Below are positions 20,906-29,981 of a DNA stretch of 64,000 nt, in pieces. The DNA lies in the NCBI GenBank assembly GCA_904063045.1, contig CAJFCJ010000004.1, forward strand, positions 1,853,713 through 1,917,712. The letters run 5' to 3'. Both the position numbers and the translations under genes were made by a program. The notes beneath the pieces were generated by a model. That model saw only the letters and a list, made by a program, of their open reading frames with translations, was not told where the DNA came from and ran no database searches. Each line of letters opens with the position of its first letter. Within the stretch, counting starts at the first letter, position 1. The DNA comes from Dimorphilus gyrociliatus (taxonomy: Eukaryota > Animalia > Annelida).

Positions 20906-22614
20906 TTAACTATAGTCGTCCTTAAACTTCTCCATTTTTTTCAGATAATCGACGTCTGCTATTGGTTTTAGTTTGTTTAGAATTTTTAGCATATCACTCA
21001 AAGTTACTGCAGGTACTAATAATTCATTTTCTGAAATTTGCATAAAGGACATTTCTATGGCTTCTGGAACTTCAGGACTGCATGGAGTCAACAGATCTAC
21101 AATCTGCTCTTTGTTAGTAGGTGATGGTCCACTTACTGTTCTAAAATGTGTTGCATCTCGTACTTTATAAACTGGTTGTAAGCAAGCTTCACGTGTAATT
21201 TGATGTATCTCAGCTGCAGAAAATCCTTCAGTCTTTTCTCCTAAAGTTTTAAAATCGTCTTCATGTAACTCATTAACAGAATTCTCCATGTATAATTTAA
21301 ACAAAGTAGTACGAGCATCTTCCTCTGGTAATTGAATATGTATACGCTTTGTAAAATATTTGAGGACACGATAATCTAAAGTCCACGGAGTGTTTGTCGA
21401 TCCTATAACCCATACTCCATCACTTTCATGCCAATGTATACTTATTTGACATAGAATTTCAGTTTTTAACTTTCTTGCATGCTCATTATTGTCTTCATTG
21501 GAAAATAGGAAATCAATAGCTTCTAACAATATTATACTAGGTTTCCTTGCACTAGCCATTCTAAAGGTGTCTTTGATCACTTTTAAACCCTCTCCGTGCC
21601 ATTTACATATCTGAATATATATTACAAATATTCCAATTAAAATTACAAAAATACAATAATTTTATAAAATTACCAGATCAGCAGACGATATTGAAAAGAA
21701 ATTAGAACTATTTGCTTCAGTTGCAACAGCTTTCGCTAAGTATGACTTTCCAGTTCCAGGTGGTCCAAATAATAAAGTGCATTTCCCAGGTAGTTTTGTA
21801 CCAGTAAATAAATTTGGGAACTTTATAGGCAGAAGAACACTTTCTTTCAGAGCTTGTTTGGCTGCTTCTAAACCAATAACTTTATCCCATGGTACATTAC
21901 AACTTTCAAAAACAATTTCTTTTTGAAGTTGTGGATTGATTTCTCTCTTATCCGATTCTTTCTTATTGTCGTTGCTTATTAGATGATGTTATAATAAGAA
22001 AAAGAGTTGAAATTATAAAAGAACTATTACCTTTGATTATCCTTTTCATTTTTAATCAAATCGGCTTTCAGTTTCTCAGCTCTGTTGAGATATTGTAAAA
22101 CTTTTGCTCTAACCTGACTTTTGACTGCTTGATTTGTTAGTTCGTCTTGAAAAATTTGTATATTTTTTTAATTATTATAATGATTTTATATATAAAGAAA
22201 TATTAAGAAAATCTTACATTTTAAAGCATTTAAAAAACATTGAAGTCCATTTTTATATAATTTGAAAGCTTCCTCAAAGTTTTCTGCATAATCTTCTTCA
22301 ATTGCTTGTTTTAAATAAGTAATTCCTTTCTGAAAATGATGAATATTTGTTATTTTACATCTTTTTATAAGATTAAATGATTTACTTTGAGGGAGGGTGT
22401 CACCAAACCGGTTTCCTTCTAAAAAATATATACATTTATTTGTTTAAGCGTTCTAACAATTTTAATATACAAAGAGATTTACCTCTACAAAAGGTATTAT
22501 GGCAGCTTCATCCTGATGGTTTCATAAATTTTATACTCTCTATATCTTATACAAATGGATACTCACTCCGATAGAAGGTTCTTCTACAGTTAGTTCTTCA
22601 TTGGAGCCCGTCAT
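20906..22614 (-). CDS. VPS4 paralogue C: MIT plus AAA domain, Walker B and Arg-finger degenerate
   Basis: Intact spliced ORF (exons ~22567-22614, 22484-22513, 22220-22331, 22031-22153, 21675-21976, 20906-21610). [16 protein letters not shown]...YLNRAEKLK; Walker A GPPGTGKS; Walker B ILLEAID; LDYRVLKYF replaces LDAAIRRRF. Confidence 0.85.
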
Positions 22615-22902
22615 ATTTTAAAATGTTGCCTACTATTTCTATGGGATTTACTGCGAGTCTTTCATGTTGTAATAAGGATTCTCCCTATTAGTCACTTACA
22701 CGAGAAGAGTGAGATTTACTCATAAATCAAATATCTAGGGTTGGTTCGATTGTGAAAATATTAATTATTAATCTTATCAAAAATCAGATATTATTACGAA
22801 ATAACCTTAAACACCATAAAATATATGATTCTTTACATTATTAAAGTATTGTTTTCTCAGTTATCATTCAAACAAAAAAGTAGTTCAAACAAAACTATAA
22901 CG

Positions 22903-24123
22903 TTAAGTATTGGCATAACGATTGACAAATTCTTCAATTCTCTCTACTTCTTCACTTGAAATTGTTGGTTTGTATTTTTTGAATATTTTTAACACAACTT
23001 CCATCGAAATTTCAATTGTTGAGAATTTCCCTTCCGGAACATCTTCAAAAGTCATTTCTACTGCATCGCAGTCGTCTGATTCGCAAGGTAGCCAAAGATC
23101 AGTGTCTATAATTTCCTTGTTCTCTGGTGAAGGTCCAGTAACTTTTTTAAAGTGAGTAGCATTTCTCAAAATGTTAATGAAATCAAAGGAAACTTCCCGA
23201 ACAAAGCATGTTAAATCACTAGCGGAAAATCGTTCGGTTAATAAACCCAGCTTTGCAAAATCTTCTGCCTTTAGATTACTACGTAAATCTTTCATATTAT
23301 TTTTAATAATTAATGTTCTAGAATCTCTATCTTGAAGAGGAAGATAGACGATTTTTGCAAATTTCCTCCGAACAATAGAACATAATTTCCACGGAGCACC
23401 ACAAGCTCCCACTATAGAAAGTCCATTGTTATTATCAAAAGCGACACCATTTATTTGAACTAATAATTCTGTTACTATTCTATAAACTCTGGAACTTTCC
23501 TCAACCACTTCGTTAGTGAGAAATTCCAAATCATCTAAGAAAACTATGCATGGCTTAGTCTCTCTTGCAAAGTTGAAAAACCTCTTAACTAACTCTCCTC
23601 CGTCGGAAGCTTGTCCTGTCATCTGAGTTGTAAAATAATTAAGCATTATTACAATCGTTTATAACATTGCTATGGTAATCATTTGCTGTACTATGATTCA
23701 TCATTACATGATTGAAATGTATACTTACAAAATCTGCAGGATGAATATGAAATAGAGATATATTTTCTGCAATGCTAGCGATAGATTTAATCAGATACGT
23801 CTTTCCAACTCCATTTACACCGCAAACAAGCGTCTTTTTAATTGGTGTTGGAAATAATTTTGGAAATTTCAAAGGAAATATTGTGCATTCAAGCAATTGC
23901 TTCTTTATTTCAGGAGGACATATTACATCATCAAAGTGAACGGTACTTTTAACAGGTTCAATGAAATATTTCACACTTTTATCTAGGTCATCCTCCGTTT
24001 TGGTCTCTTTTATTTCTCGATCATTATTATCCTGTAATAATTAATTGTTATATAATTTATAAGTACAACTGCTATCTAGAAACGCTTAGATACCTGTAAA
24101 TGATAATTAGATATATTTTCCAT
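22903..24123 (-). CDS. VPS4 paralogue B: MIT-less, divergent AAA domain
   Basis: Exon 1 MENISNYHLQ (24094-24123) splices directly to the linker/AAA exon. GVNGVGKT, VFLDDLEF, GACGAPW, IVRRKF; VPS4 beta-domain retained. The intron after 'ADF|' is at the same position as in VPS4. Confidence 0.82.
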
Positions 24124-25195
24124 CTTATTGTGTGCATATAAAGCCAGATTAGTTATGTTTCCATTTCAGATTAGTGTAGCATGGTCGCTGAGGAATATAA
24201 TTTCGCAAGACAAATCAGTTATACATGAGTCATGATCATGTGATGTCAACAAAATCTATTTACTGGCAAAAACCATTCAAGAAAGGGTTTATTTTTAAAA
24301 GTTTAGATTGTAGATAAAAGCAAAAAAATAACATAATTTCATTAACTAATACTAATATTCTAATTTATTAATTTTTCAAGATAAATAGAAGCTCTTATTA
24401 CTTTCAACTTTGTTTACTTATTCTTTATATAAATTAAAATTTTTACTATTTATTGTTAGTTAGAGTGTAATAACTAGTTAGTTAATGAAGTATATCTTAT
24501 GCCATTTTTGTGGTCGTACCCTTATTTACTTTTAAATTTTAAATGATTTACAATTCATACTCAAGTATGATTTATATGCTCTCTCATTTTCCCCCATTTC
24601 GTATGAAAAATTATAGTGAGGATTTATCAAAAGAGTAGAAAATGAATCATAGTCACATGAATAGTGAATAAATTACGCACGAAATTCCGGTTCAAAATGA
24701 CAAAATGAGAAGAGATAAGATAGTAACTCTTCAATGACTAATACTTGAATTAGTAATTAAAATATAATGGGAATAGGTATTCGCCTATTTAAAAGTAATT
24801 AAATTATAAAACAAACAAGGAAATAGCAATTAACTATGAAGTTAATTAGTTGGAAACCAATTGTTTATTATTTTCAATCTGTAATAAATATAACTTAATT
24901 TTAGAAAACTATAAAAACAGAAGAATAAATTTCGTATCAATTAAAGCTTTACATATATACTGTCTATATTTATATAAATTTATATATATATTTATATACT
25001 TACGATGTAATTGAACTAAAGTATGAACAAGTTTTATTTTCCTTACTTCAACTTCATACGGAAATGAAGCAGCTACTCTTTACATACAATTTAAAAAATA
25101 TTGAATAAATCATTCATGGTTAAAACGAAATAAAATATATAATTTTTATGTTTTATTTTTGAGAGTAAATATTAAGCAGTTTGTTTCCGCTGATT

Positions 25196-27279
<2,084 letters not shown>

Positions 27280-27340
27280 TTCCTGTTCATTTACTCGTGA
27301 ATGGCACAAAAAATTCAGATAAGGAACAGTATAATATCAA

Positions 27341-27354
27341 GGCGGAAGTGACGT
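27341..27354 (+). promoter_or_regulatory. Overlapping ETS-CRE composite motif in the VPS4/MerB-like divergent promoter
   Basis: GGCGGAAGTGACGT, ~60 bp upstream of the VPS4 start codon; a known housekeeping-promoter composite motif. Motif match only. Confidence 0.45.
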
Positions 27355-27938
27355 ACAAAATGTTTTCGGATTCTGACTACTCCTCTAAATATTTATTATA
27401 CACATTAAGCATATAGATAATACTTAACAGCAATTCTACTTTAACAAAATAAATAAACATTGTAAAAAGTACGAAAATATTTTTCTTTCTGCTTTCCTCT
27501 TCCTTCAACTTTTCGTTGCAATTTTTAAAAATCTGCGTCTAAAGTTCTAAAAATTATTTTATATTTTAACTTGAAAATAAATTAATTCTGCAAAAGCTGA
27601 ATATGACTTTGGCAAGTAATATTATCATTCATATTTAAATAGTTGATTAATTTTAACTATCGTCTGTGAATTATTGTTGATTTAGTCGAAGATTTTTTAT
27701 GAGCACACTTCGTATTAGACCTCATCTCAAAAGCATAAAGCTACAAATAAATTATCATTATTTATTATGTAAAAATATGTGCATTTATATTTTAATTTTA
27801 CGAAAACTAATTAATTCTTTTTCAAGGTCTTGTTTGTTGCCTGAAATCATATTAAATTACGGCATACCGATATACTCATTGTTATTTAAAGTATAGAGGA
27901 GTATACATTTTGTGAAAAGAGTACTGCATCTCATTGTC

Positions 27939-28634
27939 ATGAGTACTGAAACCAACATAACGAATTCAACTTTGCATTACACTATTATTAAGACTGTCAT
28001 AGACAAAGGATATGCACCAGATTTAAGTAAGCTGTCTGAAATACTAGGTCAATCAGAAGATCAAATCAAGGCTGCGTTGTATAAACTTCAAAATGATCAT
28101 GGAGTCGTTTTGCATCCAAATGAACCTAAAGTTTGGGTTATACATCCCTTTTCATTAGCTCCAACAAACTTTTACGTTAAGTCGGAAAAAGGTGAATGGT
28201 GGGGAAATTGTGCTTGGTGCTCGTTAGGCATAGCTGCTATACTTAAAGAGAATGTTACCATAGCAACAAATATTGGGGGTGAAGACAAACATATAATTAT
28301 CGAAATAGTTGATGGGGAACTTAAAAACAAAGGTTTGTTCATACACTTTCCTATTCCTATGAAAGAAGCATGGAAAAATGTTATATTTACTTGTGGGGTA
28401 ATGCTTGCATTTGAAAGTGAAGATGAGGTTGACGTCTGGTCTAAAAAACATAACATACCAAAAGGTGATGTACAGCCTATTGAAAAAATATGGAACTTTG
28501 CAAAAAAGTGGTATGGTAATCATGCAAATCCTAAATGGAATAAATGGACAATTGATGAAGCTAAAAGTATGTTTAGCGAATTTCAATTGAATCATCCGAT
28601 TTGGAATTTGGAAAATTCAGAAAAAAACTTCTAA
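27939..28634 (+). CDS. Alkylmercury lyase (MerB) family protein, intronless, bacterial-like
   Basis: N-terminal helix-turn-helix-like segment; HPFSLAPTNFYV; WGNCAWCSLGIAA; VIFTCGVMLAF; FAKKWYG. The layout matches MerB-family proteins (PFS..PT.H, xWCAxD, FC motifs). Single exon of ~231 aa from the ATG at 27939. Confidence 0.8.
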   Translation: MSTETNITNSTLHYTIIKTVIDKGYAPDLSKLSEILGQSEDQIKAALYKLQNDHGVVLHPNEPKVWVIHPFSLAPTNFYVKSEKGEWWGNCAWCSLGIAAILKENVTIATNIGGEDKHIIIEIVDGELKNKGLFIHFPIPMKEAWKNVIFTCGVMLAFESEDEVDVWSKKHNIPKGDVQPIEKIWNFAKKWYGNHANPKWNKWTIDEAKSMFSEFQLNHPIWNLENSEKNF

Positions 28635-29031
28635 ATTTTAAAGTATAATAAGAGAAACTCTTAGGGAAAGAAAGAGGTTAGATAGTTGGAAAAACTTTTA
28701 TAGCCTTCTTAGCCAAAGTAGACCAAACTATTTGAAATTATAGTTTTGTCTTTGTCCTATATATGTTGAATAAAATTATAAAAATTTAAATAATGCATGG
28801 CACATTTTCACTTTGTATATCGGAAATGTCTTAATCGATATTTTACATAAGAAAGGTTTCCATAGTAAATTTCAATAGGCGAGCGATAATAAAATAATTT
28901 ATCAATTAAAACATTATTTAGGTTTCAATAAATTTTTTAAGCTTCAAGGATCTAGTTAAAAATCGTTAATATGAAAGTTTAAGAAAATTCACAAAAATAT
29001 TTTCGAATACGAAAATGACAACGAATTGAAA

Positions 29032-29042
29032 CTTCCTTTTCC
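29032..29042 (+). promoter_or_regulatory. 5' TOP / TCT polypyrimidine initiator of RPL36A
   Basis: CTTCCTTTTCC ~20 nt upstream of the ATG of a ribosomal protein gene. Confidence 0.6.
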
Positions 29043-29062
29043 GTTTTTCATCGGCAGTAAAT

Positions 29063-29612
<550 letters not shown>

Positions 29613-29981
29613 ACTCCGTTTCGTATGTTATGCTTTGCCTAATACATCATTCTGACGAGTAAGAGAGTCAAACTGTATTAGTTTTTATGACGTAGACAAT
29701 AGACGTAGGCAGGACGACTAGAATACTTGGATATGTTAAAAAGCTGAGAAAAGTTTTTTGAACACCGAAAATATAACAAAAGTATTTTAAAACTTGGAAC
29801 TTAAATTCTTTGAATATTTCAACTTGAGACAGTTGCTTATTCTACCCTTTTTCTCATAGAAGCTCCAATTTTGCTCTTAAATTAATGCACCAAGATCAAG
29901 GTGTTTAAGTAATAGTTTGTTAAATAATTTCTGTTCATCTTCAGAGAAATTATGTGAAGATTGATTAACAATTGTGTAGAA

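What the first reader, a model, noticed from the sequence alone, without database searches (positions are those of the whole stretch)
27939..28634. Intronless bacterial MerB-like (organomercurial lyase family) gene in an animal genome, with a Cys-x-x-Cys active-site variant
Seen: a single-exon ~231-aa ORF between intron-containing VPS4 and RPL36A, with host-like AT content and head-to-head with VPS4 across an ETS-CRE promoter. Motifs are PFSLAPTNFYV, WGNCAWCSLG and FTC. Established: MerB cleaves C-Hg bonds using Cys96/Asp99/Cys159 (xWCAxD motif), is essentially prokaryotic, and a Ser99 variant binds copper. Here the Asp-equivalent position is Cys. Inference: a horizontal transfer (the sequence resembles Bacteroidota-type MerB-family proteins) that may give a sediment or interstitial animal organometal detoxification or metal-binding capacity. 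No MerA is in the window, so any Hg(II) product would need another sink.
Basis: partly seen in the sequence, partly recalled or inferred. Interest (0 to 1): 0.86.

Follow-up and report, generated by a model that had tools for sequence, protein, structure and literature searches.

The report
Bacterial MerB-like gene in a worm
A small marine worm carries and transcribes an intact gene taken from bacteria that encodes a three-cysteine relative of the enzyme bacteria use to break methylmercury, but nobody has yet measured what this version does.

Summary
An intact 231-codon, single-exon ORF lies at 27939-28634 (+), between an intron-containing VPS4 gene and RPL36A.

- **Family and fold:** it passes Pfam MerB (E 6e-32). 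The predicted structure (pLDDT 96) matches only MerB and MerB2 crystal structures.
- **Active site:** a profile alignment puts Cys91 on MerB Cys96, Cys94 on the proton-donor Asp99, and Cys152 on Cys159. These are the only three cysteines in the protein.
- **Linkage and expression:** a short-read DNA contig joins the gene to both host neighbours without a mismatch. Two spliced RNA data sets from different studies hold an unspliced ~965-nt transcript (27826-28790) that ends 16 nt after an AATAAA.
- **Origin:** the nearest relatives are 226-aa Bacteroidota proteins at 63-67% identity. The worm protein sits inside that clade (99/94 support). An AU test rejects grouping it with the fungal homologues (p 5e-06).

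- The Cys-x-x-Cys site is the norm for a large uncharacterised bacterial and fungal subfamily, not an animal novelty.
- MerB-family genes are already known as horizontal transfers in fungi.

No activity has been measured. I favour carbon-mercury bond cleavage or soft-metal capture at the three-cysteine site.

The parts
27826..27938 (+). 5' untranslated region of the MerB-like transcript. It holds no ATG and has an in-frame TAG at 27894.
   Evidence: RNA contigs start at 27826 (X2) and 27841 (X3). ATG and stop scan.
27939..28634 (+). Single-exon coding sequence, 231 aa plus TAA stop: MerB-family protein of the three-cysteine (99Cys) subfamily.
   Evidence: (no joints inside the transcript).
27963..28094 (+). 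N-terminal three-helix, winged-helix-like domain (residues 9-52).
   Evidence: Model helices H9-23, H29-36 and H40-52. Weak profile and Foldseek matches to GntR, LexA and MntR DNA-binding domains.
28149..28517 (+). Pfam MerB (PF03243) domain, residues 71-193, covering the whole 126-position profile.
   Evidence: 110.7 bits, gathering cut-off 27.
28209..28220 (+). Codons for Cys91-Ala-Trp-Cys94. Cys91 corresponds to MerB Cys96. Cys94 corresponds to MerB Asp99, which is Ser in MerB2.
   Evidence: Profile alignment to PDB chains 5c17 and 3f2g. Both residues are invariant in 183 close homologues.
28392..28394 (+). Codon for Cys152, which corresponds to MerB Cys159.
   Evidence: Cys in 181 of 183 close homologues.
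28374..28376 (+). Codon for Lys146. This is a rare substitution at a position that is Asp in 164 of 183 close homologues and aligns with an Asp of canonical MerB.
28635..28790 (+). 3' untranslated region. AATAAA lies at 28769-28774, and both RNA contigs end at 28790.
25196..27291 (-). Upstream neighbour, lying head-to-head: the intron-containing VPS4 gene. Its 5' end is near 27291 and the ETS/CRE-like CGGAAGTGACGT lies at 27343-27354.
29064..29660 (+). Downstream neighbour: the intron-containing RPL36A gene. Exon 1 is ATGGT at 29064-29068 and RNA depth is very high. The end coordinate is approximate.

Best explanation
**What it is.** This is a real nuclear gene of the animal. It was acquired by horizontal transfer from a Bacteroidota-like bacterium and inserted between VPS4 and RPL36A. 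It now runs as a eukaryotic single-exon gene:
- It uses a new start codon five codons upstream of the bacterial one.
- It has a 113-nt 5' UTR.
- It has a 156-nt 3' UTR with AATAAA.

**The protein.** It encodes a 231-aa protein with no N-terminal hydrophobic stretch, so it is presumably cytosolic. It has the full MerB fold. Its only three cysteines (Cys91, Cys94, Cys152) occupy the positions of MerB's Cys96, Asp99 and Cys159.

**How it most likely works (inferred, not shown).** The three thiols form a trigonal soft-metal site. An organomercurial (R-Hg+) binds Cys91 and Cys152. The third thiol, Cys94, takes over Asp99's job as extra ligand and proton source, and the carbon-mercury bond is cleaved by protonolysis. 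Hg(II) stays held by three thiolates until cellular thiols remove it.

**My odds.**
- Horizontal transfer, integrated and transcribed: about 0.95.
- Kept under selection as a working protein: about 0.8.
- Acts on a soft metal or organometal at the three-cysteine site: about 0.6.
- Specifically cleaves C-Hg bonds: about 0.4.
For: **Family and fold**
- Pfam MerB E 6.3e-32, covering the whole profile.
- A family profile hits MerB2 (5c17, E 1.3e-22) and MerB (3f2g, 1s6l; E 1e-10 to 1e-11), with the residue mapping given above.
- The AlphaFold2 model has pLDDT 96. The top 11 Foldseek PDB hits are all MerB or MerB2, with TM 0.48-0.70.

**Integration in the host genome**
- A 6415-nt short-read DNA contig covers 26035-29900 with 0 differences. 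Its depth (267) is like that of other host contigs (194-256).

**Transcription**
- Runs X2 (2017, another study) and X3 behave as RNA. They show spliced VPS4 and RPL36A joints and RPL36A depth in the tens of thousands.
- Both hold an unspliced contig, 27826/27841 to 28790, with 0 differences. Depth is 196 and 28, against 877 and 180 for VPS4.
- The contigs end 16 nt after AATAAA.

**Bacterial origin**
- The best non-self hits are 226-aa Bacteroidota proteins at 63-67% identity (E 1e-105), in bacterial gene contexts.
- The protein is nested in a 20-row clade of 18 bacterial rows (mostly Bacteroidota), one unnamed metagenome protein and the window's own. Support is 99/94, with bacterial outgroups.
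- The AU test rejects a window-plus-fungi clade (p 5e-06).

**Constraint**
- 0 of 20000 shuffles keep the frame open.
- 93 of 104 columns conserved in 183 bacterial homologues are kept, including all three cysteines.

**Mechanism**
- Three-thiol model compounds perform protonolysis of methyl- and ethylmercury (Melnick and Parkin, as reviewed in PMC10114901).
- A horizontally acquired fungal MerB homologue (MMD) is a proven MeHg demethylase (PMC9704736).
Against: - No activity has been measured for any member of the 99Cys subfamily that I could find.
- In canonical MerB, Asp99 is essential. The natural 99Ser form (MerB2) does not degrade MeHg and has limited activity on other substrates (PMC10114901).
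- The bacterial homologues are stand-alone genes. They share no conserved neighbours, and no HMA-motif (MerP/MerA-type) protein lies within three ORFs. This argues against a classical mercury-resistance role.
- No NCBIfam model reaches its cut-off. The only hit is SaoL, at 36 bits against a cut-off of 140.
- The worm protein deviates at 11 of 104 conserved columns, against a bacterial median of 2. The changes include Asp146 to Lys, and the protein sits on a longer branch. This could mean relaxed constraint or a changed function.
- Producing Hg(II) without a MerA-like sink can be harmful (PMC8261052).
- The poly(A) tail itself was not seen. Contig ends are not exact transcript ends.
Confidence: 0.6

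Rival explanations
1. The gene is a working horizontal acquisition, but its job is not carbon-mercury cleavage. The three-cysteine site would bind or buffer a soft metal such as Cu(I), Zn, Cd or Hg(II). Alternatively it acts on another organometal(loid) such as tin, lead or arsenic, or it works as a Cys-x-x-Cys redox site. The function of the bacterial subfamily would be equally non-mercurial.
For: - The bacterial homologues are very common, stand-alone genes without mer neighbours.
- Replacing Asp99 with Ser turns MerB into a copper binder or cripples MeHg cleavage (PMC10114901).
- MerB-family sites are known to accept other metals (10.1101/2022.07.06.499078).
- Atlas structural neighbours include NosL-like and thioredoxin-fused MerB domains.
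Against: - The whole MerB fold and both catalytic cysteines are kept.
- Three-thiol coordination is the chemistry that activates Hg-C bonds in model compounds (PMC10114901).
- No alternative substrate has any direct support.
Confidence: 0.3
2. The gene is an integrated and transcribed but functionless relic, drifting toward decay.
For: - Its end branch is longer than those of bacterial homologues: 0.59 against a median of 0.21, and 0.37 in the tree, where its nearest bacterial rows have 0.05-0.3.
- It deviates at 11 of 104 conserved columns against a bacterial median of 2.
- It carries rare changes: D146K, S153G, L196A and R230N.
- No orthologue in another animal is available to show conservation over time.
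Against: - The 231-codon frame is open in AT-rich DNA, where 0 of 20000 shuffles stay open.
- 64 of 68 near-invariant columns and all three cysteines are kept.
- Most changes are conservative.
- A new start codon and a defined 3' end with AATAAA are in place.
- RNA depth is about a fifth of VPS4's in two independent data sets.
Confidence: 0.08
3. It is bacterial contamination or a chimeric assembly, so the gene is not in the animal genome.
For: - The gene has no introns, and its closest relatives are all bacterial.
- The best DNA run may be the sample the assembly was made from.
Against: - One short-read contig runs from VPS4 exons through the gene into RPL36A with no mismatch and at host-like depth.
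- RNA contigs from two studies carry 113 nt and 156 nt of the host's own flanking sequence and stop after AATAAA.
- There are no bacterial genes on either side.
- The nearest bacterial protein is only 67% identical.
Confidence: 0.01
4. It is an old eukaryotic gene inherited vertically, shared with the fungal MerB-family genes and lost elsewhere.
For: An ascomycete clade of similar length (about 230 aa) with the same C-x-W-C motif exists.
Against: - The fungal proteins are only 22-30% identical to the window's, against 63-67% for Bacteroidota.
- The fungi form their own clade (100/100), far from the window's protein.
- The AU test rejects uniting them (delta lnL 69, p 5e-06).
- No other animal protein appears among the best 120 hits in 5.8 billion clusters.
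Confidence: 0.01

Closest known systems
Bacteroidota 226-aa 'alkylmercury lyase family protein' (for example in Flavobacterium terrae DSM 18829, Lacibacter luteus, Maribacter litopenaei and Saprospiraceae MAGs; uncharacterised)
   Same: - 63-67% identity over the whole length.
- Same domain order: winged-helix-like N-terminus, MerB domain and a Trp-rich C-terminal tail.
- Same three cysteines.
- The worm protein is nested inside this clade.
   Different: - The worm gene has a new start codon five codons upstream, eukaryotic UTRs and host neighbours.
- It sits on a longer branch.
- It carries rare substitutions: D146K, S153G, L196A and R230N.
Canonical organomercurial lyase MerB of plasmid R831b (PDB 3F0O/3F0P, 1S6L; EC 4.99.1.2)
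   Same: - Same fold: Foldseek probability 1.0, TM 0.57-0.67.
- Profile E about 1e-10.
- Cys96 and Cys159 are conserved as Cys91 and Cys152.
   Different: - Only 12-15% identity in the structural alignment.
- Asp99 is replaced by Cys, and Cys117 by Ile.
- There is no Cys160.
- There is an extra C-terminal tail of about 35 residues.
- It is not in a mer operon.
- A single-sequence search of the PDB finds nothing.
MerB2 of Bacillus megaterium (PDB 5C17), the natural 99Ser variant
   Same: - It is the best solved relative by profile (E 1.3e-22) and by structure (TM 0.63/0.70, rmsd 3.4).
- It also lacks Asp at position 99.
   Different: - It has Ser, not Cys, at that position.
- MerB2 sits in a mercury-resistance transposon alongside canonical MerBs and has weak activity (PMC10114901).
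Fungal MMD (Metarhizium robertsii MAA_09685) and the ascomycete MerB-family clade
   Same: - These are MerB-family genes acquired by a eukaryote from bacteria and kept as working nuclear genes.
- MMD demethylates MeHg in vitro and in vivo (PMC9704736).
- The ascomycete clade that I could retrieve has the same C-x-W-C motif and third Cys.
   Different: - These were independent transfers (AU test), with 22-30% identity to the worm protein.
- I could not obtain the MMD sequence, so I do not know whether MMD itself has Cys or Asp at position 99.
SaoL, the selenocysteine-containing MerB-like lyase of anaerobes (NCBIfam NF040728)
   Same: It is another MerB-family branch with a non-canonical metal site and a suspected non-mercury or wider organometal role (10.1101/2022.07.06.499078).
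   Different: - The score is 36 bits against a cut-off of 140.
- SaoL keeps Asp at the 99 position and has a Cys-Sec pair at the 159 position.
- The worm protein has neither feature.

Membership tests
Pfam MerB family (PF03243) and MerB fold | Score above the Pfam gathering threshold over the domain | tested here: met
   110.7 bits against a cut-off of 27. Residues 71-193 cover profile positions 1-126 of 126.
Pfam MerB family (PF03243) and MerB fold | Three-dimensional fold of MerB | tested here: met
   The model has pLDDT 96. The top 11 Foldseek PDB hits are all MerB or MerB2, with probability 1.0 and TM up to 0.70. The next hit has E 0.06.
Canonical organomercurial lyase MerB (signature used by Christakis et al. 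2021, PMC8261052) | Cys at position 96 | tested here: met
   Cys91 aligns with Cys96.
Canonical organomercurial lyase MerB (signature used by Christakis et al. 2021, PMC8261052) | Asp at position 99 (proton donor) | tested here: not met
   Cys94 aligns with Asp99. The position is Cys in 183 of 183 close homologues.
Canonical organomercurial lyase MerB (signature used by Christakis et al. 2021, PMC8261052) | Cys at position 159 | tested here: met
   Cys152 aligns with Cys159.
Canonical organomercurial lyase MerB (signature used by Christakis et al. 2021, PMC8261052) | Cys at position 117 | tested here: not met
   By the profile alignment, Cys117 falls on Ile112 of the window's protein. The protein has no fourth cysteine.
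Canonical organomercurial lyase MerB (signature used by Christakis et al. 2021, PMC8261052) | Cleavage of Hg-C bonds (EC 4.99.1.2) | not testable with these tools
   Needs recombinant protein and an organomercurial assay.
Canonical organomercurial lyase MerB (signature used by Christakis et al. 2021, PMC8261052) | Genomic association with mer genes (MerA, MerR, MerT, MerP) | tested here: not met
   Across the bacterial homologue loci (387 neighbouring ORFs), there is no conserved neighbour and no HMA-motif protein within three ORFs. The window holds no MerA-type redox motif. Both checks are crude.
MerB-like variant 99Ser (MerB2 type) | Ser at position 99 | tested here: not met
   The residue is Cys.
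SaoL (NCBIfam NF040728) | Score above the curated cut-off; Cys-Sec or Cys-Cys pair at the 159 position | tested here: not met
   36.2 bits against a cut-off of 140. The sequence reads T-C-G at 151-153, with no in-frame TGA.
Horizontally acquired, domesticated bacterial gene in an animal | Physical linkage to host genes in reads or contigs independent of scaffolding | tested here: met
   A 6415-nt Logan contig spans 26035-29900 with 0 differences. Caveat: the run may be the assembly's own source.
Horizontally acquired, domesticated bacterial gene in an animal | Phylogenetic nesting inside a bacterial clade, with no vertical eukaryotic alternative | tested here: met
   Clade support is 99/94. 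The AU test rejects window plus fungi, p 5e-06.
Horizontally acquired, domesticated bacterial gene in an animal | Transcription as a eukaryotic mRNA | tested here: met
   Unspliced contigs in two spliced RNA data sets from two studies end 16 nt after AATAAA. The poly(A) tail was not seen directly.
Horizontally acquired, domesticated bacterial gene in an animal | Purifying selection after transfer | tested here: inconclusive
   The frame is open and 93 of 104 conserved columns are kept. There is no second animal sequence or polymorphism data for a dN/dS test.

The most novel reading that the evidence does not exclude
This is the first animal-encoded organomercurial lyase. A meiobenthic annelid would enzymatically demethylate methylmercury, or cleave other organometals, with a three-cysteine MerB variant taken from Bacteroidota. 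That would also reveal the activity of a very large, so far ignored, bacterial and fungal '99Cys' MerB subfamily that current merB surveys filter out.
Probability: 0.35. Interest if true: 0.85.

Novelty: new variant of a known kind. Interest (0 to 1): 0.62.

Why it matters
**Animal demethylation.** How animals demethylate methylmercury is an open question. It is usually ascribed to gut microbes or non-enzymatic chemistry. In the literature I could search, MerB-family genes are reported in bacteria, archaea and fungi but not in animals. An integrated, expressed MerB-fold gene in a laboratory-cultured annelid makes the question directly testable.

**merB surveys.** This finding points to a very large bacterial and fungal subfamily in which the catalytic Asp is replaced by a third Cys. 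The signature used in merB surveys (Cys96, Asp99, Cys159, Cys117) excludes it. If these proteins cleave organomercurials, environmental estimates of demethylation potential are too low. If they do not, the MerB fold has a second, widespread function.

**Horizontal transfer.** This is a clean, well-supported case of bacterium-to-animal gene transfer in a genome that appears to hold several others.

Tried and rejected
- **Single-sequence PDB search:** phmmer found nothing. Only the family profile reached MerB.
- **Locus search with the wide alignment:** A1 was too diverse. I repeated it with the closer set A2.
- **Metarhizium MMD sequence:** I wanted to read its residue at the Asp99 position. 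Two homologue searches seeded with fungal members, the paper's supplements (none held) and a text search for the locus tag all failed. The link to a biochemically proven enzyme is therefore untested.
- **Names and organisms:** cluster look-ups gave names for only a few representatives. AlphaFold DB hits had their organisms hidden.
- **Function from bacterial gene neighbourhood:** there is no conserved neighbour; the commonest family is in 7 loci.
- **Composition:** GC3 and codon usage are host-like. Some Bacteroidota homologues are just as AT-rich (8 of 81 have GC3 as low), so composition does not discriminate.
- **Insertion footprints:** I looked for target-site duplications, terminal repeats and structured RNAs around the gene. 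Only short AT-rich chance repeats turned up, and no Rfam hit.
- **Run X6:** this 2024 run has the same species label but shows only C-to-T differences and no usable coverage of the gene. It is uninformative.
- **Scan notes:** a search of the scan's notes for mercury-related genes in this genome was blank.
Full report
**1. The observation**

The ATG is at 27939 and the TAA stop at 28632-28634, giving 231 aa. An in-frame TAG lies at 27894, and there is no ATG between 27826 and 27938. In this AT-rich sequence an open frame of that length is not a chance event: 0 of 20000 shuffles of the ORF are free of stops.

The quoted motifs are at residues 70-80, 88-97 and 150-152. The protein has only three cysteines, at 91, 94 and 152.

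**2. The surroundings are eukaryotic**

- **Upstream, minus strand:** VPS4 exons. RNA contigs splice them with 50-66 nt introns that have CT..AC ends on the plus strand, which is GT..AG for the gene.
- **Downstream, plus strand:** RPL36A. Exon 1 is ATGGT at 29064-29068. The spliced continuation reads on as M-V-N-V-P-K, the introns are GT..AG, and RNA depth is in the tens of thousands.
- **Further downstream:** a BTB-type ORF.
- **Organism:** I did not verify that independently. The intron sizes fit the median of 66 bp published for that species (PMC7854359).

**3. The gene is part of that chromosome and is transcribed**

In run X1 (DNA), a 6415-nt contig assembled from the reads alone covers 26035-29900. 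It runs from VPS4 exons through the ORF into RPL36A with no difference, at depth 267, comparable with other host contigs at 194-256. That run may be the assembly's own source, so this rules out a scaffolding join but is not an independent sample.

Independent support comes from RNA. Runs X2 (2017, another study, another organism label) and X3 (2020) are labelled '?' and 'DNA?'. Both behave as RNA, with spliced VPS4 and RPL36A joints and extreme RPL36A depth.

- Each run holds one unspliced contig over the gene: 27826-28790 in X2 and 27841-28790 in X3, both with 0 differences.
- Depth is 196 and 28, against 877 and 180 for VPS4.
- Each contig carries 113 (or 98) nt and 156 nt of the host's own flanking sequence.
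- Both contigs stop at 28790, 16 nt after an AATAAA at 28769-28774.
- I did not see the poly(A) tail itself.

Weak RNA contigs also lie further upstream (27493-27770 and 27641-27863), so some transcripts may start earlier.

It lies about 50 bp from the VPS4 5' end (27291) and about 480 bp from the MerB-like 5' end. The two genes are divergent neighbours, not clearly partners on one promoter.

**4. What the protein is**

- **Family:** Pfam MerB matches over its whole length (E 6.3e-32, 110.7 bits against a cut-off of 27).
- **What does not match:** no NCBIfam model reaches its cut-off. Only SaoL appears, at 36 bits against 140. A single-sequence search of the PDB is blank.
- **Profile search:** a profile of 39 family members finds MerB2 (5c17, E 1.3e-22) and MerB (3f2g, 3fn8, 1s6l; E 3e-11 to 3e-10).
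- **Structure:** an AlphaFold2 model built on the same alignment has mean pLDDT 96 and pTM 0.92. Its 11 best Foldseek matches in the PDB are all MerB or MerB2 (probability 1.0, TM 0.48-0.70). The next match has E 0.06.
- **N-terminus:** residues 9-52 form a three-helix, winged-helix-like unit with weak matches to GntR, LexA and MntR domains.

**5. The active site**

In the profile alignments the window's C-A-W-C lies on MerB's C96-A-L-D99 and on MerB2's C-A-I-S. T-C152 lies on F-C159. The mapping is:

| Window residue | Canonical MerB position |
|---|---|
| Cys91 | Cys96 |
| Cys94 | Asp99 |
| Cys152 | Cys159 |
| Ile112 | Cys117 |
| none | Cys160 |

It is not peculiar to this gene, though:

- Cys91 and Cys94 are invariant in 183 close bacterial homologues, and Cys152 is present in 181 of them.
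- Among 103 cluster representatives at 50% identity, 84 have Cys at the Asp99 position, 8 have Asp and 2 have Glu. 66 show the full Cys/Cys/Cys pattern.
- The 11 aligned members of an ascomycete clade all have the C-x-W-C motif as well.

The largest published merB survey screens for Cys96, Asp99, Cys159 and Cys117. It names only '99Ser' and '117alt' variants (PMC8261052). This '99Cys' subfamily therefore seems to be uncatalogued and uncharacterised.

**6. Where the gene came from**

The best non-self hits among 5.8 billion protein clusters are 226-aa proteins at 63-67% identity (E about 1e-105). Where named, they come from Bacteroidota: Roseivirga, Flavobacterium, Lacibacter, Flagellimonas, Algoriphagus and Ekhidna. 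Two that I looked up sit among bacterial genes.

A scan of one genome per prokaryotic species returned 255 relatives. The best 80 are almost all Bacteroidota (Saprospiraceae, Flavobacteriaceae, Chitinophagaceae, Cyclobacteriaceae and others).

The trees give the following:
- **First tree, 89 rows:** the window's protein falls in the mostly Bacteroidota clade (91/94) without a resolved sister.
- **Second tree, 60 rows:** this tree adds 11 fungal and 28 diverse sequences. The window's protein lies in a starred clade (99/94) of 20 rows: 18 bacterial genome rows, one unnamed metagenome protein and the window's own. Successive bacterial outgroups are Thalassomonas, Pyrinomonadaceae and others.
- **Fungi:** they form their own clade (100/100) elsewhere in the tree.
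- **AU test:** forcing window and fungi together costs 69 log-likelihood units (p-AU 5e-06).

I conclude that this was a transfer from a Bacteroidota-like donor, independent of the fungal acquisitions. The donor family is not resolved, and the rows were chosen as best matches to the query.

No closer animal sequence appeared in the databases, so the transfer looks lineage-specific. The run index finds only near-identical DNA and says nothing about relatives.

**7. State of the gene**

- Of 104 columns at least 90% conserved in 183 bacterial homologues, the worm protein keeps 93. That is 64 of the 68 near-invariant columns.
- It deviates at 11 columns, against a bacterial median of 2, a 95th percentile of 6 and a maximum of 12.
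- Most changes are conservative. The rarer ones are Y53D, E130N, D146K (just under that 90% threshold: Asp in 164 of 183, and aligned with an Asp of canonical MerB), S153G, L196A and R230N.
- The bacterial start Met is now Asn6, and translation starts five codons upstream.
- Its end branch is longer than those of bacterial rows: 0.59 against a median of 0.21, and 0.37.
- GC3 (0.273) equals the mean of host coding stretches in the window. Some bacterial homologues are just as AT-rich, so this is consistent with adaptation to the host but is not diagnostic.
- I found no repeats, target-site duplication or RNA elements around the gene.

Together this looks like a functional gene that has evolved somewhat faster since transfer. 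A formal selection test needs a second animal sequence or polymorphism data.

**8. How it most likely works**

Shown here:
- The MerB fold.
- Two catalytic cysteines in place.
- A third cysteine in place of the proton-donor Asp.
- No signal-like N-terminus.
- Transcription.

Established knowledge (review PMC10114901):
- Cys96, Asp99 and Cys159 are essential in MerB.
- The engineered D99S mutant of MerB binds Cu(II).
- The natural 99Ser MerB2 did not bind Cu(II), does not degrade MeHg and has limited activity on other substrates.
- Model compounds with three thiol ligands do carry out protonolysis of methyl- and ethylmercury. That work was the basis of the MerB mechanism.

My inference is that Cys91 and Cys152 bind R-Hg+. 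Cys94 supplies the third sulfur ligand and the proton, R-H leaves, and Hg(II) stays on three thiolates until glutathione or other thiols take it.

Precedent exists in a eukaryote. Metarhizium MMD, a horizontally acquired MerB homologue, demethylates MeHg in vitro (Km 3.9 uM) and protects the fungus (PMC9704736). I could not obtain its sequence, so I do not know which residue it has at position 99.

Evidence against a classical mercury role:
- The bacterial homologues are stand-alone genes with no conserved neighbours. No HMA-motif protein lies nearby.
- The family is far more common than mercury-resistance operons would predict.

I put C-Hg cleavage at about 0.4 and any soft-metal or organometal function at the three-cysteine site at about 0.6.

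**9. Comparison and novelty**

The protein is a member of the Pfam MerB family and fold. It is not a canonical MerB, because Asp99 and Cys117 are not met. It is not a 99Ser MerB2 type and it is not SaoL. Its true family is the uncharacterised Bacteroidota-type 99Cys subfamily.

Horizontal acquisition of MerB-family genes by eukaryotes is known for fungi. I found no report for an animal in the searchable literature, and the Dimorphilus genome paper does not discuss horizontal transfer.

I rate it a new variant of a known kind, with interest 0.62. The transfer itself is solid and the organism is tractable, but the function is unmeasured and the 'variant' site is inherited from the donor family.

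Noticed in passing
window 26665-27291: The two RNA data sets splice the VPS4 5' region differently. X2 joins 26665 to 26716 (a 50-nt intron) and runs on to 27291. X3 joins 26665 to 27262, skipping 596 nt. This looks like alternative 5' splicing or intron retention.
   Followed up: no
window 27493-27863: Low-depth RNA contigs lie in the space between VPS4 and the MerB-like gene: X2 at 27493-27770 (depth 19) and X3 at 27641-27863 (depth 5). The second overlaps the MerB-like 5' end. These may be longer leaders, which would contain the 65-codon ORF 27699-27896, or a separate unstable transcript.
   Followed up: no
window 20906-27291, minus strand: There are three tandem VPS4-like genes. The ORFs lie at 20906-21580, at 22903-23974 and in the canonical copy at 25196-27291. 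An earlier first-reader note flagged these (s1-080429).
   Followed up: no
window 28374-28376 (Lys146): The window has Lys where 164 of 183 close bacterial homologues have Asp, and where canonical MerB also aligns an Asp six residues before Cys159. The significance is unknown.
   Followed up: partly
P0226, P0298-P0322 (fungal proteins): A monophyletic ascomycete clade of MerB-family proteins of about 230 aa carries the same C-x-W-C motif. It includes Orbilia, Colletotrichum, Penicillium, Aspergillus, Lipomyces, Trichoderma and Trichophyton. The clade looks wider than the 15 fungal MMD homologues listed in PMC9704736.
   Followed up: partly
run X6 on window 25900-29900: This 2024 run with the same species label shows only C-to-T differences on short matching pieces. 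It looks like a bisulfite or enzymatic-conversion library and gives no usable coverage here.
   Followed up: no
L006 and L007: The MerB-like proteins of Flavobacterium terrae DSM 18829 and of a MAG labelled 'Chitinophaga' are almost identical (branch lengths 0 and 0.004). This is either recent transfer between bacterial families or a mis-binned contig.
   Followed up: no
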